From positions 3,596,001 to 3,660,000 of the forward strand of contig NC_079164.1 in the NCBI RefSeq assembly GCF_947568905.1: DNA of 64,000 bases, written 5' to 3'. This DNA is from Ostrea edulis (lineage: Eukaryota). Position 1 is the stretch's first letter, and each line of letters begins with the position of its first letter. A program made the position numbers and the translations under genes. Positions 2,601-9,365 of the stretch are shown here, piece by piece. The notes below the pieces were generated by a model. It searched no databases, had not been told where the DNA came from, and saw nothing but the letters and a program-made list of their open reading frames with translations.

Positions 2601-3388
2601 TTCAATATATGACCAAAATATTCAATACAATGTTTGTTGTTTTACTCTCGTAGGAGAATAAATATCACTTAGAAATAAGCGGGAATTCATTGTAAGCATG
2701 TTGTACTGTGTATAAAAATATATATATATGGATATATTTATACATTGAGTATTTATGCATGTTTCAAGGTTACATGCACTGGTTTCAACCTGTCTCTTTT
2801 TAATTTTAAAACTCTGTCCGATTCCATCTTTGGGGTAAAATACTAGTGTATGCATAACTGAAATAGTTTGGTTGTAAATGTGTTGTATTTATAGAGCCAA
2901 GATTTACAAAACAATAGCACAGTATGATTCCATATATCACAAAAATATTAAAAAACAAAATATTCTATCAAAATTACAAATAATTATATCTTTATGTATC
3001 AGAGATAATAATTTCCCTTTATATGGAATTAAAATCTTAGTTCATACCTGATGTATAACATAATGCTTAGAGTTGGCCATCTTTTGCCCTGTGATTAGAA
3101 CCTCCAAGAAGTTAACATTAATTAAAATTCACATTGTACTGCTACGAATAAATTTGTAAGGATAAGAATAGAATACGAAACTTGCAGAATACGAAACTAA
3201 CTCACTGATTATGAAACTGCATGTACTTAAAACCATTTTAAGACATGTATCTATCTCTTTGAAAAAAATAAATGTGTATACAATTGCTTCTGCTGGTGCA
3301 CACTTAAAAGGAAGCACCCAGGTACTGTTCATGACTTCCCAGCGACATCTGTAACATTCATCTACATTACTACACAATCATAACACAA

Positions 3389-6300
3389 TCAGGAAGTCTT
3401 TGTCTTCTCCCATTGTTCAGGAGTTAAGGTCTTCATTTGGAAAGCATGGATGACTTTTAAATCTTCCTCTAAAACTTTATTCACTAATCTGAAAAGACAA
3501 AATATTTGTTTGTTATGCCTTTGATTAACAATTACTAATGAGACACTATATTGCTCGCCTGAGTTTCCGAAGTAAAACTCTAAACCCTCACTAAACAACC
3601 AATTAAGTAAGTTTTGAACAACACGTTGCAATTAAGAAGTTTACAAGCAACAAACAGGAAATGGCATACTTTAATCAGAAAAGCTAACTTGAGCTTTACA
3701 GTTAATAGAAACTATCAATAATTTGTCTATCTTCAAACATACAAGGCCATCATTAAAAACATTTTTGTTTGATGTACTCCGACCCACATTTTTCAAGGTG
3801 GGTCGGTAGGTAGGTTTTTCTTTTTTTTTTTTTTGGAACGTACGTCATGAAAATTTCTAATATTTTCATTCAAAATAAGGAGAATTTTCTATTTTTTAAG
3901 GGACCCCCCCCCCCCCCCCCCCAAATGAAATTTCAAATTGCTGAAAAAAAATGATAGGGTAGGAGCAAATTTGATGGGTCGGTCGGAGTACATCAAACAA
4001 ATCAATTTTTATTTTTGGCCCAAGGCATCTTGCTGACTACATCACTCAAGTGTTCATTCTTTCAAAACACAGAAAAGATTCTGCATTCTGATCAAGGTGT
4101 TTGATCCTCTCAAAACAAAGAATAACCATGACTCCACATTCTGATTCAAGTTATTGACATTTCACCAGATTAAACACAGATTTTTTTTCCTTTCATTTCT
4201 CTTCTTCACCAAACGCTCAGTATTTAGAAGTGATAATCATGGCTTTCAGATGTGACCTTAGAAATGGAAGTCCCAAGTTGCAGCAGGCGTTGGCAAGTTA
4301 AGGAACTCTCACTGCTACATGTATGGTCCTAAGTGCTAAGCCTAGGTCTAAATTTGGTTGAGATATTTGGAATGGTCGTGATATTTGTACTGGTTGAGAT
4401 ATTCAGAGTGGTTCTAATATTTGGACATGCTGAGATATTTGTGCTGGTTGAGATATTTTTCTGGTTGTGATAATTGGACTGGTGGTGATATTTGGACTGG
4501 TTGAGATATCTGGACTGGTTGAGATATTTGGACTGGTTGATATATTTGTGTAGGTTTAAATATTTGGACTGGTTGAGATATTTGGACTGGTTATTATATT
4601 TGGACTGGTTGATATATTTGGACTGGTTGTGATATTTGCAGTTGGAAATGATATTTGGACTTATTGAGATATTTGGACTGGTTGAGATATTTGGACTGGT
4701 TGTGATATCTGGACTGGTTGATATATTTGTGTATGTTTAAATATTTGGACTGGTTGAGATATTTGGACTGGTTGATATATTTGGACTGGTGGTGATATTT
4801 GGACTGGTTGAGATATCTAGACTGGTTGAGATATTTGGACTGGTTGAGATGTTTGGACTGGTTGAGATATCTGGACTGGTTGAGATATCTGGACTGGTTG
4901 AGATGTTTGGACTGGTTGAGATATTTGTGTAGGTTCAAATATTTGGACTGGTTGAGATATTTGGACTGGTTGAGATATTTGTGTAGGTTGAGATATTTGG
5001 ACTGGTTGAGATATTTGGACTGGTTGAGATGTTTGGACTGGTTGAGATATTTGTGTAGGTTGAGATGTTTGGACTGGTTGAGATATTTGTGTAGGTTGAG
5101 ATATTTGGACTGGTTGAGATATTTGGTGTGTTTGTGGTCATTAAACTGGTTGTAAAATAAACGTACATTTACATCAATACAAAAATCACTCCACTTATAA
5201 TAACATAACAAAGTCAAATCTTGCCTTGATTGGTTCAGATGGTCTAAGAATTCTGTAATTAACATTAAAGTTACCTGTGTCTTTGTAAAAGTGGAAGCCC
5301 TTCAAATTTGGAGGAGACAATCACCGTCTGAAATTTGGCACCACACCCATCTGACATGTCCATCACCTCCTAATACAGATAGATAGAGACGAGTCAACTC
5401 TAATGTTTCTTTAAACAGATGGAAGCAAGTTACCTCTAGACTAATGCTTTCATTCATACAGTCATGAATTTTCAGATAACATATAATCAATTTGTGTTCA
5501 TAATATCTGCAGGTCTCTAACATTTATGCGACTTCCCGTAGGCCATCATCTCGAGCCACAGTTCCGAGTCCACATAGAGAGAATGTACATTCTGGCCTTG
5601 GTTTGCGATAATGTCAGTACCTACATAATTAAGGGGTAAAGAACTAAATTCGCATGTTGTCATCAAGACATCCCCCCCTTTAAAGAAATTAAAATGATGA
5701 ATGTTGATCCAAATCAATTAACAAGCACTAATAACACTTTATACTTTTTCTATCTGCTTATAAATTCACAAAATTAATGAAAGTGTCCAGGTAGTACACA
5801 TGTGGTGCGTCTTTGAATGTCACTTGAAATATATATACTTTATAAATCAAATGAGTTACTCATCTTGCTAAAATTACTCAATCCATGGTCACCTGTGAGA
5901 TTTGCACTTGTGATCTATAGAATCCTTATAATGTCATGTACATGGGGGTCACATAGTGAGGAACATTCATAGACCATGAAATGGCGGTGGTTTTATCGTA
6001 AAAATCTAAACACATATCAAAACTTTGATACTAATTTTATATGTAACAGGAAGGGAGAAAATACAGCAGACCAGACTGGGATTTGAACCCGGACCCCCTG
6101 AATCTAGTCAGGTGCTCTACTAACTGAGCTATCTGGCCACCAATGATCGAACCTGTCTCAGGCTGCCACATTCCTTCATCCTTAAATGTCTGCACACCTT
6201 GCACACATCAACTCAAGAATTTTTTATCCCAGCTCTCCTCTCAGGCATTTTCACCTGTCAGTTCCAGGGGCTGGTCTACAGCACCAAATGCAACAGGAAG

Positions 6301-7084
6301 GGAAAATATACAATTGACCAGACCAGGACTCGAACCCGGGCCCCCGGCCTGAATCTCTAATCTAAATCAACTGAGTTATCTGGCCTGAATCTCTAATCAG
6401 ATGCTCTTTCAACTGAGTTATCTGGCCACTGGCGATCAAATCCATCTGACCACCACATATACATATAATATAATGCTTCAGTGTGATTAAAATCAGACTC
6501 CATACTCATTATGATAATGAGACTGGAATTGTTTATGGTTTGAGTGTCAATTTTTACAATTATTTCATGCATATATCAAATTCAAAATTACTACAAATGT
6601 GGGTTCTTCCAGGCGTTTTGCCCTGTGGGCCCCAACAAAGGTTTCGTCCTACACCAACTAACCCTCCTGCGATATGATTCATTACTTCAGCTACATAGAT
6701 TTACAGTATTTAATCAGGGACCTATATACTAATACTTAGTATATATAGGTCCCTGATTTAATGCATTTCTAGAAATTGAAATGTTTTTATCGCTACGCCA
6801 TTGACAAGAACTTAGAAGTCTCAAATAAAACATCCCAGTGATATAATGAATAACATTTAAATAAGGATTTGTGACAAGTCTCTTTTACGAAAATATCAAT
6901 CGAGACAAAAATTAAGTAAGAGGAAATTCGAGCCAATATATAGTTAAACGTGAAATTTAAAATTCTTCGTAGAATAAAAAAATCATAATTCAAAAATAGG
7001 AATAGAATATTTTACCAGATGAGTTACGTCAGCCAATTCTGGTGAAGATTTCAATTTCTGTTCAATGTGCTCCGTGCTCGACAT
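3389..7084 (-). CDS. BOLA2: BolA-like protein 2, 87 aa, 3 exons
   Basis: Exons 7084-7016 (MSSTEHIEQKLKSSPELADVTHL), 5369-5275 (EVMDMSDGCGAKFQTVIVSSKFEGLPLLQRH-R) and 3488-3389 (LVNKVLEEDLKVIHAFQMKTLTPEQW EKTKTS*). Splice sites are canonical and phases are 0 and 2. GCG, VS.KFEG..LLQRHR.VN and IHAF..KT.TP.QW are BolA2 signatures. Confidence 0.95.
3745..4020. mobile_element. MITE in BOLA2 intron 2
   Basis: Perfect 21-bp inverted repeat TTTGTTTGATGTACTCCGACC at 3764-3784 and 3981-4001, with GGCC at both outer ends. Confidence 0.75.
4380..5125. repeat. 18-bp minisatellite (GACTGGTTGAGATATTTG) in BOLA2 intron 2
   Basis: Dozens of 18-bp units; explains the NQSKYL and DWLRYL repeat ORFs. Confidence 0.95.
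6045..6430 (-). mobile_element. tRNA-derived SINE-like element with two tRNA-like heads in BOLA2 intron 1
   Basis: The minus strand of 6069-6138 folds as a cloverleaf (GGCCAGA/TCTGGTC acceptor, GCTC/GAGC D-arm, TTCAAAT T-loop) but has a 6-nt anticodon loop. A second diverged copy lies at about 6325-6428. Confidence 0.7.
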
Positions 7085-7301
7085 TTTCTTCTTCCGAATG
7101 AAACCGAAACTAAACAAAACGATAATAAAGTTTCAAAATTCCATGATATTTTCGTGACGGGTATAGACTATAAAAAATGATAACAAACAAATTACATGAT
7201 TTTTGTTTCGTTAAATGGTAAAAGAGTTGATAATATCTCAGATAAAAAAAAATTTAACATAATTTCTTTTTATCTAAACGTCATCTTATTTCTGTAATGA
7301 C
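7085..7301. promoter_or_regulatory. Short bidirectional promoter/5'UTR region between BOLA2 and SelO
   Basis: Divergent ATGs at 7084 (-) and 7302 (+), 217 bp apart. Confidence 0.7.
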
Positions 7302-9365
7302 ATGTCAACGAGAGAGCTACTTTCACTTTATCTTTTTATACTACATTTCCTTTACAATGATGCTGTTTTTGCAAAGTCCGGTGCATGTAGAAAGCTGTCT
7401 CTTTTGGACTTAGTTATAAAAGATGAATGCCCGAGTGTCTTTATTCTACACAGTTTCAAATCGTGGAAATTTAATCGAAGGCAGGTGCTTGCTAGATCTT
7501 TTCCTTTGGACCCCATCGTACAGAACTACGTGAGACAAGTCCACGACAGTTTATTTTCCGTCACATACCCTATGCCTTTAAAGTCACAGACCTACCTTGT
7601 GTCATATTCTAAGTCAGTTCTCGTCGATATTTTGGACTTGTCAGACGATGTTGTCAAGAGTGCAGAGTTTGTGAATTTTGTGAGTGGAGCTAAGGTATCA
7701 CCTGGTTCTATCCCCCTGTCACACAGGTATGGAGGGCACCAGTTTGGCTACTGGTCAGGTCAGCTGGGGGATGGACGGGCAGTGATGTTAGGGGAGTACA
7801 CCAATCAACAAGGAGAGACATGGGAGCTTCAGCTGAAGGGGTCGGGGCGGACTCCATATTCTCGTCGTGGGGATGGGAGGGCGGTTCTCAGATCATCAGT
7901 CAGAGAGTTCTTATGCAGCGAAGCAATGTTTCATCTTGGTATGTAAGCTTTTGCTTAGCTTGTAACTTACACGTACAAAGCAATATCAGTACGTCCAAAT
8001 AATGTTTGTATTATGTGTATAGGGGTATTGCAAACTATAAGTACTAAAACAATCATTATAGTTACTGGCCAGAAAATCAATCTGGAAGTATAGCCACGAT
8101 CTACGTCATTATTTTGTGTTTTTCATGCTTCAGGTATTCCTACCAGTCGTCTACGTCATTATTTTGTGTTTTTCATGCTTCAGGTATTCCTACCAGTCGT
8201 CTACGTCATTATTTTGTGTTTTTCATGCTTAAGGTATTCCTACCAGTCGTCTACGTCATTATTTTGTGTTTTTCATGCTTCAGGTATTCCTACCAGTCGT
8301 GCAGCAGCTCTTGTGGTGTCAGATGACCCTGTGATACGCGACCAATTTTATGATGGAAATCCGAAACCGGAGAGAGGTGCCATTGTCTTACGACTGGCTC
8401 CTTCCTGGTTCCGGATCGGGTCTCTGGAAATCCTGGCCAAAAACAACGAGATTCAACTTCTTCGACAGCTTTTAAACTTCGTAATTGAAAAATACTTTCC
8501 CCACATAGACAAAACTGACCAGGATAAATACCTAGCTCTGTACAGTACAATTGTGTCAGAAACTGCGGAACTGATTGCAAAATGGCAGAGTGTGGGCTTC
8601 ACCCACGGTGTTTGTAATACAGATAATTTCAGCCTGCTTTCCCTCACAATTGATTATGGACCTTTCGGATTCATGGAGGAATACAACCCAAACTTCGTAC
8701 CAAACACCTCCGATGATGAAGGGAGGTACAGTTATGAAAACCAACCTGGTATTGGTGTTTTTAACTTGGAAAAATTAGGAGAAGCATTAAAACCGGTACT
8801 GAGACACCATCAGACAGAACAAATACAACATATACTGAACGGTTATGAGAGAAATTACAAGGAAAAGTTTATGGAACTATTTAGACAGAAACTAGGGTTG
8901 TCTACTGATAATGAAGATGATGAAAATATTGTTGCAGTATTTCTGAAAATCATGGAAGACACCAAGTCAGATTTCACTATGTCATTTCGAGAACTTGGAG
9001 AAATTGATCTGATGGGATTAAACTCTGATACTATACCTCACAAATACTGGGCATTGACCACAATGGCAGATCATGAGTGGTTCTGGAAATGGATTGCAAT
9101 CTACAAAACCAGATTAACACAGGAGGGAACATCAGAGAAAACGAGACAGTCCCTTATGAATAAAACAAACCCTAGGTACATACTGAGAAATTGGATGGCC
9201 CAGGAGGCAATACAAAGGGCAAACAGAAATGACTTTAGCGGGGTTATCGAACTTCTCAGGGTCCTGGAACACCCCATGGAATGGAACGCAGAAGCAGAGG
9301 AGGCAGGCTACTCCTCCCTACCCCCAGAGTGGTCCAAATCACTCCGGGTCAGCTGCTCTTCATGA
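7302..9365 (+). CDS. SELENOO: Protein adenylyltransferase SelO-like (YdiU/UPF0061 family), Cys-type, 2 exons
   Basis: Exon 1 is 7302-7938 and exon 2 is 8284-9365, joining as HLG|IPTSRA. Motifs [60 protein letters not shown] and IDYGPFGF are intact; the C-terminus is [14 protein letters not shown]. Confidence 0.95.
8101..8300 (+). repeat. 4 x 50-bp tandem duplication spanning the SelO exon-2 splice acceptor
   Basis: Unit CTACGTCATTATTTTGTGTTTTTCATGCTTCAG|GTATTCCTACCAGTCGT at 8101, 8151, 8201 and 8251. Confidence 0.97.

What the first reader, a model, noticed from the sequence alone, without database searches (positions are those of the whole stretch)
7302..7430. SelO homologue begins with a classical-looking signal peptide, suggesting a secretory-pathway AMPylase
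Seen: [24 protein letters not shown]|KSGAC... has a basic n-region, a ~13-residue hydrophobic core and a V-x-A cleavage site, followed by two cysteines in the N-terminal extension. All catalytic motifs are intact. Established: characterised eukaryotic SelO proteins are mitochondrial and carry Arg-rich amphipathic presequences. Inference: this paralogue may act in the ER lumen or extracellularly, which would be a new compartment for SelO AMPylation.
Basis: partly seen in the sequence, partly recalled or inferred. Interest (0 to 1): 0.7.

Follow-up and report, generated by a model that had tools for sequence, protein, structure and literature searches.

The report
Oyster SelO2 enzyme with secretion signal
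This oyster gene encodes an intact SelO-type AMP-transferring enzyme of the little-studied SELO2 branch, and it starts with a signal-peptide-like leader found in SELO2 proteins from molluscs to birds, so this branch probably works in the secretory pathway rather than in mitochondria.

Summary
A two-exon gene (7302-7938, 8284-9365, + strand) encodes a 572-aa SelO protein. It begins [24 protein letters not shown]|KSGAC, and Cys29 and Cys43 follow the leader. One detail is wrong: the n-region (MSTRE) has net charge zero, so it is not basic.

The splice is confirmed by a transcript contig of a close relative. The ATG and the leader's reading frame are kept in Saccostrea and in another oyster. A head-to-head BolA gene 217 bp away, also kept in Mytilus, makes a far-upstream first exon unlikely. 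All catalytic residues are present.

The gene is not an oyster novelty. It is the orthologue of metazoan SELO2, a Cys-ending paralogue named in 2012 and lost in primates and rodents. By a simple test, 68 of 72 full-length SELO2 models carry a hydrophobic N-terminal leader, against 7% of internal windows. They come from bivalves, gastropods, amphioxus, sea urchins, fish, reptiles and birds, and cysteines usually follow the leader.

The leader has 1 Arg and 2 acidic residues, so it does not look like a mitochondrial presequence. The papers I could search never link SELO2 to a signal peptide.

Secretory targeting is well supported by comparison but unproven. SignalP could not be run, and there are no transcription-start or localisation data. 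One caveat is that the catalytic Asn sits in an invariant N-F-S sequon.

The parts
7302..7373 (+). Codons 1-24, the predicted cleavable signal peptide: n-region MSTRE, h-region [13 protein letters not shown], c-region NDAVFA, with likely cleavage after A24 (VFA|KS) or A21
   Evidence: Translation. Feature analysis. Conserved in Saccostrea and in oyster contig L006 with a 12-nt in-frame indel.
7374..7595 (+). N-terminal extension (residues 25-98) ahead of the Pfam SelO domain. It holds a CX13C pair, Cys29 (7386-7388) and Cys43 (7428-7430).
   Evidence: The Pfam match starts at residue 99. The Cys29 column is Cys in 82% and the Cys43 column in 66% of 73 SELO2 proteins. The CX13-14C spacing is kept in oysters and Mytilus. 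In the AF2 model of the Saccostrea orthologue the equivalent residues 20-50 have pLDDT below 50.
7302..7938 (+). Coding exon 1 (212 codons plus 1 base), with donor G|GTATGT
   Evidence: ORF and splice model. The joint 7937/8 to 8283/4, GT..AG, is seen in a transcript contig of run X1.
7939..8283 (+). The single intron (345 nt)
   Evidence: The X1 contig skips these 345 bases. DNA contigs of runs X7 and X10 run into the intron from exon 1, to 8129 and 8097.
8100..8300 (+). Four tandem copies of a 50-bp unit that duplicate the exon-2 acceptor. The last copy is the one used.
   Evidence: Tandem Repeats Finder. The spliced contig uses the acceptor at 8283/8284. A repeat contig in X8 has higher depth, 308 against 59-84.
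8284..9365 (+). Coding exon 2 with the stop codon (9363-9365). It holds D326-N327 (8622-8627), D336 (8652-8654), P352 and the C-terminal ...RVSCSS with Cys570 (9354-9356).
7836..7838 (+). Codon of Lys179 (QLKGSG), the nucleotide-binding lysine of the kinase-like fold
   Evidence: Alignment to PDB 6EAC, 6K20 and 9JYM SelO. Position.
7297..7299 (+). Out-of-frame upstream ATG, 5 nt before the start codon (ATGACATG). It opens a 38-codon overlapping ORF.
   Evidence: ORF list. ATGACATG is invariant in the window and in both Saccostrea copies. L006 has ATGTGACATG.
7016..7084 (-). First coding exon of a head-to-head BolA-family gene. Its ATG lies 217 bp from the SelO2 ATG.
   Evidence: ORF MSSTEHIEQKLK.... 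An X1 RNA contig lies on 7015-7081. Spliced BolA mRNA in L002 matches window 7044-7093, 5274-5370 and 3388-3484. A BolA Pfam gene sits at the same place in L001, L003 and L004.

Best explanation
The gene is the oyster orthologue of SELO2, the Cys-ending, non-selenoprotein paralogue of selenoprotein O found across animals. Residues 1-24 act as a cleavable ER signal peptide. The enzyme is therefore made into the secretory pathway, either staying in the lumen of ER, Golgi or a later compartment, or being secreted. It has no KDEL-type retention signal and no second hydrophobic segment. The mature protein would start near K25. It has a short, probably flexible N-terminal piece with a likely Cys29-Cys43 disulfide, followed by a complete SelO kinase-like domain that should transfer AMP from ATP to Ser, Thr or Tyr of substrate proteins. 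Shown here: the gene model, the splice, family and clade membership, intact catalytic residues, and conservation of the leader and the cysteines. Inferred: translocation, cleavage, the disulfide, the activity and the compartment.
For: The SelO domain lies on both exons (E 4e-36 and 2e-83). Catalytic residues K179, E202, R249, R256, D326-N327 and D336 align with bacterial SelO structures. For SELO2 identity, the best 120 relatives are all SelO-family proteins; the 119 whose C-terminus was read include 118 ending in VSCSS or ISCSS. The vertebrate SelO-like proteins among them are 58-61% identical over exon 2. Six signature positions match the published SELO2_BOS and SELO2_CHICK rows and not SELO_HUMAN. 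For the leader, orthologous hydrophobic leaders occur in Saccostrea (MSSSDLLSLCLF...), in oyster contig L006 (MRLLSLLLTFLHF...VLA|RSSDC) and in Mytilus. DNA conservation starts at the ATG, and the leader carries a 12-nt in-frame indel. By the simple test, 68 of 72 full-length models from seven animal groups have an N-terminal leader, against 7% of internal windows. All 30 sampled representatives have an uncharged run of 9-25 residues; in the 29 whose N-terminal extension could be delimited, cysteines follow it, and in vertebrates often a sequon. The leader has 1 Arg and 2 acidic residues. Its 19-residue hydrophobicity sum is unfavourable for a membrane span, at +4.85 on a scale recalled from memory. 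In the AF2 model of the orthologue the leader is a detached helix (4-19), followed by 30 low-confidence residues before the core. The splice is confirmed in RNA of a close relative. The BolA-SELO2 head-to-head layout is kept in oysters and Mytilus.
Against: No dedicated predictor (SignalP, TargetP, DeepLoc) could be run. The window leader alone scores only between the 95th and 99th percentile of internal segments. The n-region is neutral here and net negative in Saccostrea, and the flank after the core is more positive. The h-region contains His, Ser and two Tyr. The Mg-binding Asn327 sits in an invariant N-F-S sequon and N353 in N-T-S, so glycosylation there would be expected to inactivate the enzyme. 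These sequons are ancestral, being NMS and NHS in E. coli. A conserved out-of-frame ATG 5 nt upstream could lower use of the main start. Only contigs were available, so the transcription start is unknown. The catalytic domain has three conserved cysteines, an odd number.
Confidence: 0.66

Rival explanations
1. The hydrophobic N-terminus is an uncleaved membrane anchor. It would tether SELO2 to the ER, Golgi or mitochondrial outer membrane, with the catalytic domain either lumenal (type II) or cytosolic.
For: The n-region is neutral or negative and more positive charges follow the core, which can favour other orientations. Several orthologues have uncharged runs of 20-25 residues. The equivalent -1 position in Saccostrea P0002 is Pro.
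Against: In the window, in L006 and in Mytilus the core is only 12-15 residues and is interrupted by His, Tyr or Ser. The 19-residue sum is +4.85, unfavourable for a span (scale from memory). Small residues at -3 and -1 follow the core in most orthologues. The conserved cysteine pair just after the core suggests lumenal exposure.
Confidence: 0.14
2. The leader is an atypical mitochondrial targeting signal, and SELO2 acts in mitochondria like canonical SelO.
For: Every characterised eukaryotic SelO is mitochondrial. The C-terminal Cys motif used in redox control is retained.
Against: The leader has one Arg and two acidic residues in 24, and no amphipathic Arg-rich stretch. Orthologous leaders are hydrophobic, W/L/A/V-rich, and followed by Cys pairs and sequons. 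SELO2 invariably has Pro where E. coli SelO and canonical SELO have the activation-loop Cys (E. coli Cys272), the partner of the regulatory disulfide reported for SelO.
Confidence: 0.08
3. The leader is not part of the protein. The true start or first exon would differ, or the upstream out-of-frame ATG would capture ribosomes so that little full-length protein is made.
For: An out-of-frame ATG lies 5 nt upstream and is conserved. No transcription-start data are available.
Against: The frame from 7302 is conserved as protein in three oyster lineages with only an in-frame indel. The next in-frame Met (M91) is not conserved: it is Ile in Saccostrea. A TAA at 7275 closes the frame upstream, and no AG lies between that stop and the ATG. 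BolA 217 bp upstream leaves little room for another exon. An RNA contig of a relative covers the sequence from 7302 onward without a joint until 7937.
Confidence: 0.06

Closest known systems
SELO2, the metazoan Cys-type paralogue of selenoprotein O (Dudkiewicz et al. 2012, PMC3281104)
   Same: It has the same C-terminal Cxx> motif without an upstream Cys. It has the same signature residues: KGSG, SR-x-[39 protein letters not shown], and Pro instead of the activation-loop Cys. It is 58-61% identical to vertebrate members over exon 2.
   Different: Nothing found sets the oyster protein apart from the clade. What is added here is that the clade carries a signal-peptide-like leader with a Cys-containing N-terminal piece. 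The 2012 paper does not state this for SELO2. It says only that various locations, including the secretory pathway, are predicted for non-vertebrate SELO proteins.
Canonical SelO / SELENOO (human SELENOO, yeast Fmp40)
   Same: It has the same Pfam domain and the same catalytic residues, and is presumably an AMPylase that binds ATP in the flipped orientation.
   Different: Canonical SelO is mitochondrial, ends in Cxx[C/U]xx> and keeps the activation-loop Cys (HVCNASD). According to the 2012 paper, Bos SELO and SELO2 are only 36% identical. The window protein has a hydrophobic leader, no Sec, and Pro352 at that position.
Bacterial SelO / YdiU (PDB 6EAC, 6K20, 6III, 9JYM)
   Same: It aligns end to end from residue 74 to the C-terminus (E 1e-75 for exon 2). 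Even the last five residues, VSCSS, are identical to those of E. coli.
   Different: The bacterial enzyme is cytosolic, with no leader and no 70-residue N-terminal extension. E. coli has Cys272 for the reported Cys272-Cys476 disulfide, and SELO2 has Pro there.
FICD / HYPE, the ER-lumenal AMPylase
   Same: It would share the chemistry (protein AMPylation) in the secretory pathway, using lumenal ATP (own knowledge).
   Different: The fold is unrelated (Fic domain), and FICD is a type II membrane protein. FICD is the only secretory-pathway AMPylase described in animals.
Secretory-pathway kinases (Fam20C, VLK/PKDCC)
   Same: They are kinase-fold enzymes with signal sequences that act on lumenal or secreted proteins (PMC7948968 appears but was not read; own knowledge).
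   Different: They transfer phosphate, not AMP, and belong to different families.

Membership tests
SelO / YdiU family (Pfam PF02696) | A SelO domain match above the curated cut-off | tested here: met
   Exon 1 scores 125 bits and exon 2 scores 281 bits against a cut-off of 22.8. Together they cover profile positions 31-463 of 466.
SelO / YdiU family (Pfam PF02696) | Active-site residues: the nucleotide-binding Lys, the helix-C Glu, two Arg for the buried phosphates, the catalytic-loop D-N and the DYG Asp | tested here: met
   K179, E202, R249, R256, D326-N327 and D336 align with identical residues of 6EAC, 6K20 and 9JYM. All of them are invariant or nearly invariant in 45 SELO2 proteins.
SelO / YdiU family (Pfam PF02696) | AMP transfer from ATP to protein substrates | not testable with these tools
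   This needs an assay with alpha-32P-ATP or a biotin-ATP analogue.
Metazoan SELO2 clade | A C-terminal Cxx> motif with no Cys or Sec three residues upstream, and no Sec | tested here: met
   The protein ends ...LRVSCSS followed by TGA at 9363-9365. The clade definition is in PMC3281104.
Metazoan SELO2 clade | Signature residues that separate SELO2 from SELO in the published alignment | tested here: met
   [43 protein letters not shown] and FVPNTSD match SELO2_BOS and SELO2_CHICK. They do not match SELO_HUMAN, SELO_BOS or mouse SELO.
Metazoan SELO2 clade | Placement inside the SELO2 branch in a tree that includes canonical metazoan SELO | not tested
   No canonical SELO sequences could be fetched. 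The 120 listed hits all looked SELO2-type, and the large representative search was left unused.
Eukaryotic ER signal peptide | A hydrophobic h-region of about 7-15 residues near the N-terminus | tested here: met
   L6-Y18, an uncharged run of 14 residues with mean Kyte-Doolittle value 1.63. It passes the simple leader test that 7% of internal windows pass.
Eukaryotic ER signal peptide | A positively charged n-region | tested here: not met
   MSTRE has R4 and E5, so net charge 0. Saccostrea MSSSD has net -1, and L006 MR has net +1. Eukaryotic signal peptides tolerate this (own knowledge).
Eukaryotic ER signal peptide | Small uncharged residues at -3 and -1 of a site 3-8 residues after the core | tested here: met
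   V22-F-A24|K in the window and V-L-A|R in L006. Candidate sites exist in most orthologues.
Eukaryotic ER signal peptide | A call by trained predictors, and experimental cleavage or translocation | not testable with these tools
   SignalP, TargetP and DeepLoc are not available here, and there are no wet-lab data.
Mitochondrial presequence | An Arg-rich, amphipathic N-terminus almost free of acidic residues | tested here: not met
   There is one Arg, E5 and D20 in the first 24 residues. Orthologues have 0-3 Arg and a hydrophobic run.

The most novel reading that the evidence does not exclude
SELO2 as a whole, from molluscs and sea urchins to fish, reptiles and birds, is a signal-peptide-bearing, catalytically competent AMPylase of the secretory pathway or extracellular space. 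That would make it a second animal lumenal AMPylase beside FICD, overlooked because primates and rodents lost the gene. It would have its own redox wiring: the activation-loop Cys is replaced by an invariant Pro, a new Cys lies next to the catalytic loop, and a disulfide-type Cys pair lies in the N-terminal piece.
Probability: 0.5. Interest if true: 0.72.

Novelty: new variant of a known kind. Interest (0 to 1): 0.52.

Why it matters
Protein AMPylation in animals is currently ascribed to two enzymes: FICD in the ER and SelO in mitochondria (PMC8097203). If SELO2 is a secretory-pathway SelO, then most animals have a third, unstudied AMPylase in a different compartment, with unknown lumenal or extracellular substrates. 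It was probably missed because humans and mice lack it. The idea can be tested directly in zebrafish, chicken, Xenopus, sea urchin or oyster. For annotation, SELO2 genes should not be labelled "mitochondrial-like", as several database names now do.

Tried and rejected
(1) The transcription start could not be determined. Only Logan contigs were available. They confirm the splice but say nothing about the 5' end, and the single read-laying run is spent.

(2) P0005 seemed to show an orthologue with a different N-terminus. Its contig L002 is a chimera of antisense, spliced BolA mRNA joined to SELO2 from codon 55, so that N-terminus is an artefact.

(3) I looked for N-glycosylation sequons as evidence of ER passage. 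The two conserved sequons in the domain (N327, N353) also exist in cytosolic E. coli SelO, so they say nothing for secretion and are in fact a caveat.

(4) The AF2 model of the Saccostrea orthologue was run to see whether the Cys pair is structured. Residues 20-50 have pLDDT below 50, so it is uninformative.

(5) The ESM Atlas look-up returned only generic SelO clusters.

(6) Literature searches for SELO2 localisation, secreted AMPylases, LOC420491 and mollusc secretomes found nothing relevant. Note that "SelO2/SELENOO2" in Mariotti et al. is a different gene, a fish Sec-containing duplicate.

(7) No canonical metazoan SELO sequences could be obtained for a tree.

(8) The Kyte-Doolittle segment score undervalues the Trp/Ala-rich bird leaders, so I replaced it with a composition test.

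Full report
**Observation.** Window 7302-7430 reads [43 protein letters not shown]. The frame is closed upstream by TAA at 7275-7277. There is no AG between that stop and the ATG, so no acceptor could bring in an upstream coding exon there. The leader has a five-residue n-region (MSTRE), a 12-14-residue uncharged hydrophobic core (L6 to Y18/N19), and a c-region NDAVFA with V at -3 and A at -1 before K25. Cys29 and Cys43 follow.

R4 is balanced by E5, and the 24 residues hold 1 basic and 2 acidic residues.

**Gene model.** Exon 1 runs 7302-7938 with donor G|GTATGT. Exon 2 runs 8284-9365. Joined, they give a 572-aa open frame ending ...LRVSCSS.

- Both exons hit Pfam SelO PF02696 (125 and 281 bits).
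- There is one copy in the window.
- A contig of run X1, from a relative about 96.5% identical and evidently RNA because it is spliced, covers 7302-7937. It then joins to 8283-9259, skipping 345 bases with GT..AG ends. This confirms the splice and shows that the last of four tandemly duplicated acceptors (8100-8300) is used.
- Runs X7, X8 and X10 are genomic DNA of the window's species.
- Contigs cannot show a transcription start, so that point stays open.

**Start codon.** Three lines of evidence support 7302 as the start.

- In the DNA alignment with two Saccostrea cucullata copies, conservation begins sharply at ATGACATG. The leader carries a 12-nt indel that keeps the frame, and the translated leaders are similar (MSSSDLLSLCLFLYIVFLCF...).
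- A third oyster lineage (Logan contig L006) encodes MRLLSLLLTFLHFGGYDFVLA|RSSDCFKLSILDLVINSQCP. This has the same LLSL...F-L-H-F core, a V-L-A site and the same CX13C spacing.
- The next in-frame Met (M91) is Ile in Saccostrea.

A BolA-family gene lies head to head with its ATG at 7084, 217 bp away. The order DRC10/IQCD, BolA (-), SELO2 (+) is kept in Saccostrea and in Mytilus. A distant upstream first exon is therefore unlikely.

One oddity remains. An out-of-frame ATG 5 nt upstream (7297) is conserved too.

**What the protein is.** It aligns from residue 74 to its last residue with the solved bacterial SelO/YdiU structures (E 1e-75 for exon 2). The following residues are all in place: K179, E202, R249, R256, D326-N327 and D336. 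They are invariant or nearly so in 45 relatives.

The best 120 database relatives are all SelO-family proteins. I read the C-termini of 119 of them, and 118 end in VSCSS or ISCSS. They include two Saccostrea proteins (81% and 79% identity), other bivalves and gastropods (56-63%), amphioxus, sea urchins, and many fish, reptile and bird "SelO-like" proteins (58-61%).

Dudkiewicz et al. 2012 (PMC3281104) named this lineage SELO2. It is present throughout Metazoa, is not a selenoprotein, usually ends in Cxx>, is missing from primates and rodents, and is only 36% identical to SELO in Bos. In their supplementary alignment, the rows SELO2_BOS and SELO2_CHICK share with the window protein:

- KGSG
- GDGRA
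- [13 protein letters not shown]
- [11 protein letters not shown]
- [10 protein letters not shown]

Human, mouse and Bos SELO instead have KGAG, ADGRK, VPTTRAGACVTSE, TFIRFGSFEIF, CHGVLNTDNMS and HVCNASD. I therefore file the gene as the oyster SELO2 orthologue. A tree that includes canonical SELO was not built.

The "SelO2/SELENOO2" of Mariotti et al. is a different gene, a fish Sec-containing duplicate.

**The leader is a trait of the clade.** Among gene models with a full-length N-terminus (at least 135 residues before the GGHQF motif), 68 of 72 pass a simple leader test. The test asks for an uncharged run of at least 10 residues in the first 35, containing an 8-residue window with at least 6 of L, I, V, F, M, A, W or C. 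Only 7% of internal 35-residue windows of the same proteins pass.

- The four failures are models with longer, probably over-extended N-termini.
- Nine of the ten shorter models lack the region altogether.
- All 30 sampled representatives (oysters, scallops, mussels, clams, abalone, snails, amphioxus, urchins, fish, turtle, lizard and birds) show an uncharged run of 9-25 residues. In the 29 whose N-terminal extension my pattern could delimit, one to seven cysteines follow that run. In vertebrates there is often a sequon such as PNAS or NKS.
- The leader sequences are not alignable between phyla, but the property is kept. That is how signal peptides evolve.
- Cys29 and Cys43 fall in columns that are Cys in 82% and 66% of 73 proteins.

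Taken alone, the window leader is less impressive. It scores 15.6 on a Kyte-Doolittle segment score, between the 95th and 99th percentile of internal windows. The case therefore rests on comparison.

**Not mitochondrial, probably not an anchor.** The leader has one Arg and two acidic residues, unlike Arg-rich presequences. Vertebrate SELO is predicted to carry a mitochondrial targeting peptide, and yeast Fmp40 and mammalian SelO are found in mitochondria.

The 19-residue stretch from L6 sums to +4.85 kcal/mol on the Hessa scale as I recall it. That is unfavourable for a stable membrane span. No other hydrophobic segment and no KDEL-type end are present.

AlphaFold2 on the Saccostrea orthologue (mean pLDDT 84) gives three regions:

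- a detached helix at residues 4-19;
- residues 20-50 with pLDDT below 50;
- a confident core from residue 51.

This fits a leader plus a flexible piece, but it proves nothing.

**Caveats.**

- No trained predictor could be run.
- The n-region is neutral here and negative in Saccostrea, with more positive charge after the core. This leaves some room for an anchor or an unusual topology.
- The Mg-binding Asn327 lies in an N-F-S sequon and N353 in N-T-S. N327, F328 and S329 are invariant in all 73 SELO2 proteins, and N353 is Asn in 72 of 73. Both sequons are ancestral: NMS and NHS in E. coli, NMS and NAS in human SELO. If the oligosaccharyltransferase used N327, the enzyme would be expected to be dead, so an active lumenal SELO2 requires that this sequon stays unoccupied.
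- The catalytic domain keeps three conserved cysteines (C205, C323, C570), an odd number.

**Further differences from known SelO.** E. coli SelO is reported to be controlled by a Cys272-Cys476 disulfide. Canonical metazoan SELO keeps the Cys272 position (HVCNASD). All 73 SELO2 proteins have Pro there (P352), while Cys570 is invariant and Cys323, next to the catalytic loop, is present in 69 of 73. The redox control of SELO2 must therefore differ.

**Novelty.** In the searchable literature SELO2 appears only in the 2012 paper. That paper never uses the words "signal peptide". [quoted passage not shown]

A 2021 review lists two animal AMPylase classes: Fic enzymes in the ER and mitochondrial SelO. 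Searches for secreted or extracellular AMPylases, LOC420491, SelO-like proteins and mollusc secretomes found nothing relevant. Automatic database features may already mark these leaders, but I could not check that.

The oyster gene itself is an ordinary member of a known clade. The clade-wide secretory leader is the part worth following up.

**Verdict.** I give about 0.66 to a cleaved ER signal peptide with a lumenal or secreted, active SelO2. The remainder is split between a membrane anchor, atypical mitochondrial targeting and a start-site problem.

Noticed in passing
window 8100-8300: Four tandem 50-bp copies duplicate the exon-2 acceptor and the first 17 nt of exon 2. The spliced RNA contig of a close relative uses the last copy (8283/8284). 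In DNA run X8 a repeat contig has about 4-5 times the flanking depth, so the array looks real rather than an assembly slip.
   Followed up: partly
window 7297-7304; L001 and L003 about 5996-6003; L006 37-46: An out-of-frame ATG 5 nt before the start codon (ATGACATG) is invariant in the window and in both Saccostrea copies. Another oyster has ATGTGACATG, an ATG followed directly by a stop. This may be a conserved translational brake or a leaky-scanning arrangement.
   Followed up: partly
window 3388-7084 (- strand); L001, L003, L004: A BolA-family gene lies head to head with SELO2, 217 bp between the start codons. The order DRC10/IQCD, BolA, SELO2 is conserved in Saccostrea and Mytilus, so the pair probably shares a bidirectional promoter. 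In RNA run X1 the contig on BolA exon 1 has a mean depth near 415, against 38 for the SELO2 contig.
   Followed up: partly
L002 (Logan SRR15032735 contig, protein P0005): This contig is a chimera. Antisense, spliced BolA mRNA is joined to SELO2 from codon 55, which gives a false N-terminus (MCEIAEFLRG...) in the protein database.
   Followed up: yes
window 8613-8615 (Cys323) and 8700-8702 (Pro352): All 73 SELO2 proteins have Pro where E. coli SelO has Cys272 and canonical SELO also has Cys. That Cys is the partner of the C-terminal Cys in the reported regulatory disulfide. SELO2 instead has a near-invariant Cys three residues before the catalytic Asp.
   Followed up: partly
window 8625-8633 (N327-F-S) and 8703-8711 (N353-T-S): The metal-binding Asn of the catalytic loop sits in an N-x-S sequon. 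N327, F328 and S329 are invariant in all 73 SELO2 proteins, whereas bacterial and canonical SelO have N-M-S. This is a possible conflict with ER passage, or a hint that the middle residue was selected to avoid glycosylation.
   Followed up: no
database names of hits P0013, P0017, P0073, P0104: Several SELO2-type proteins with hydrophobic leaders are named "SelO, mitochondrial-like" in public annotation. The name is probably transferred from canonical SelO.
   Followed up: no
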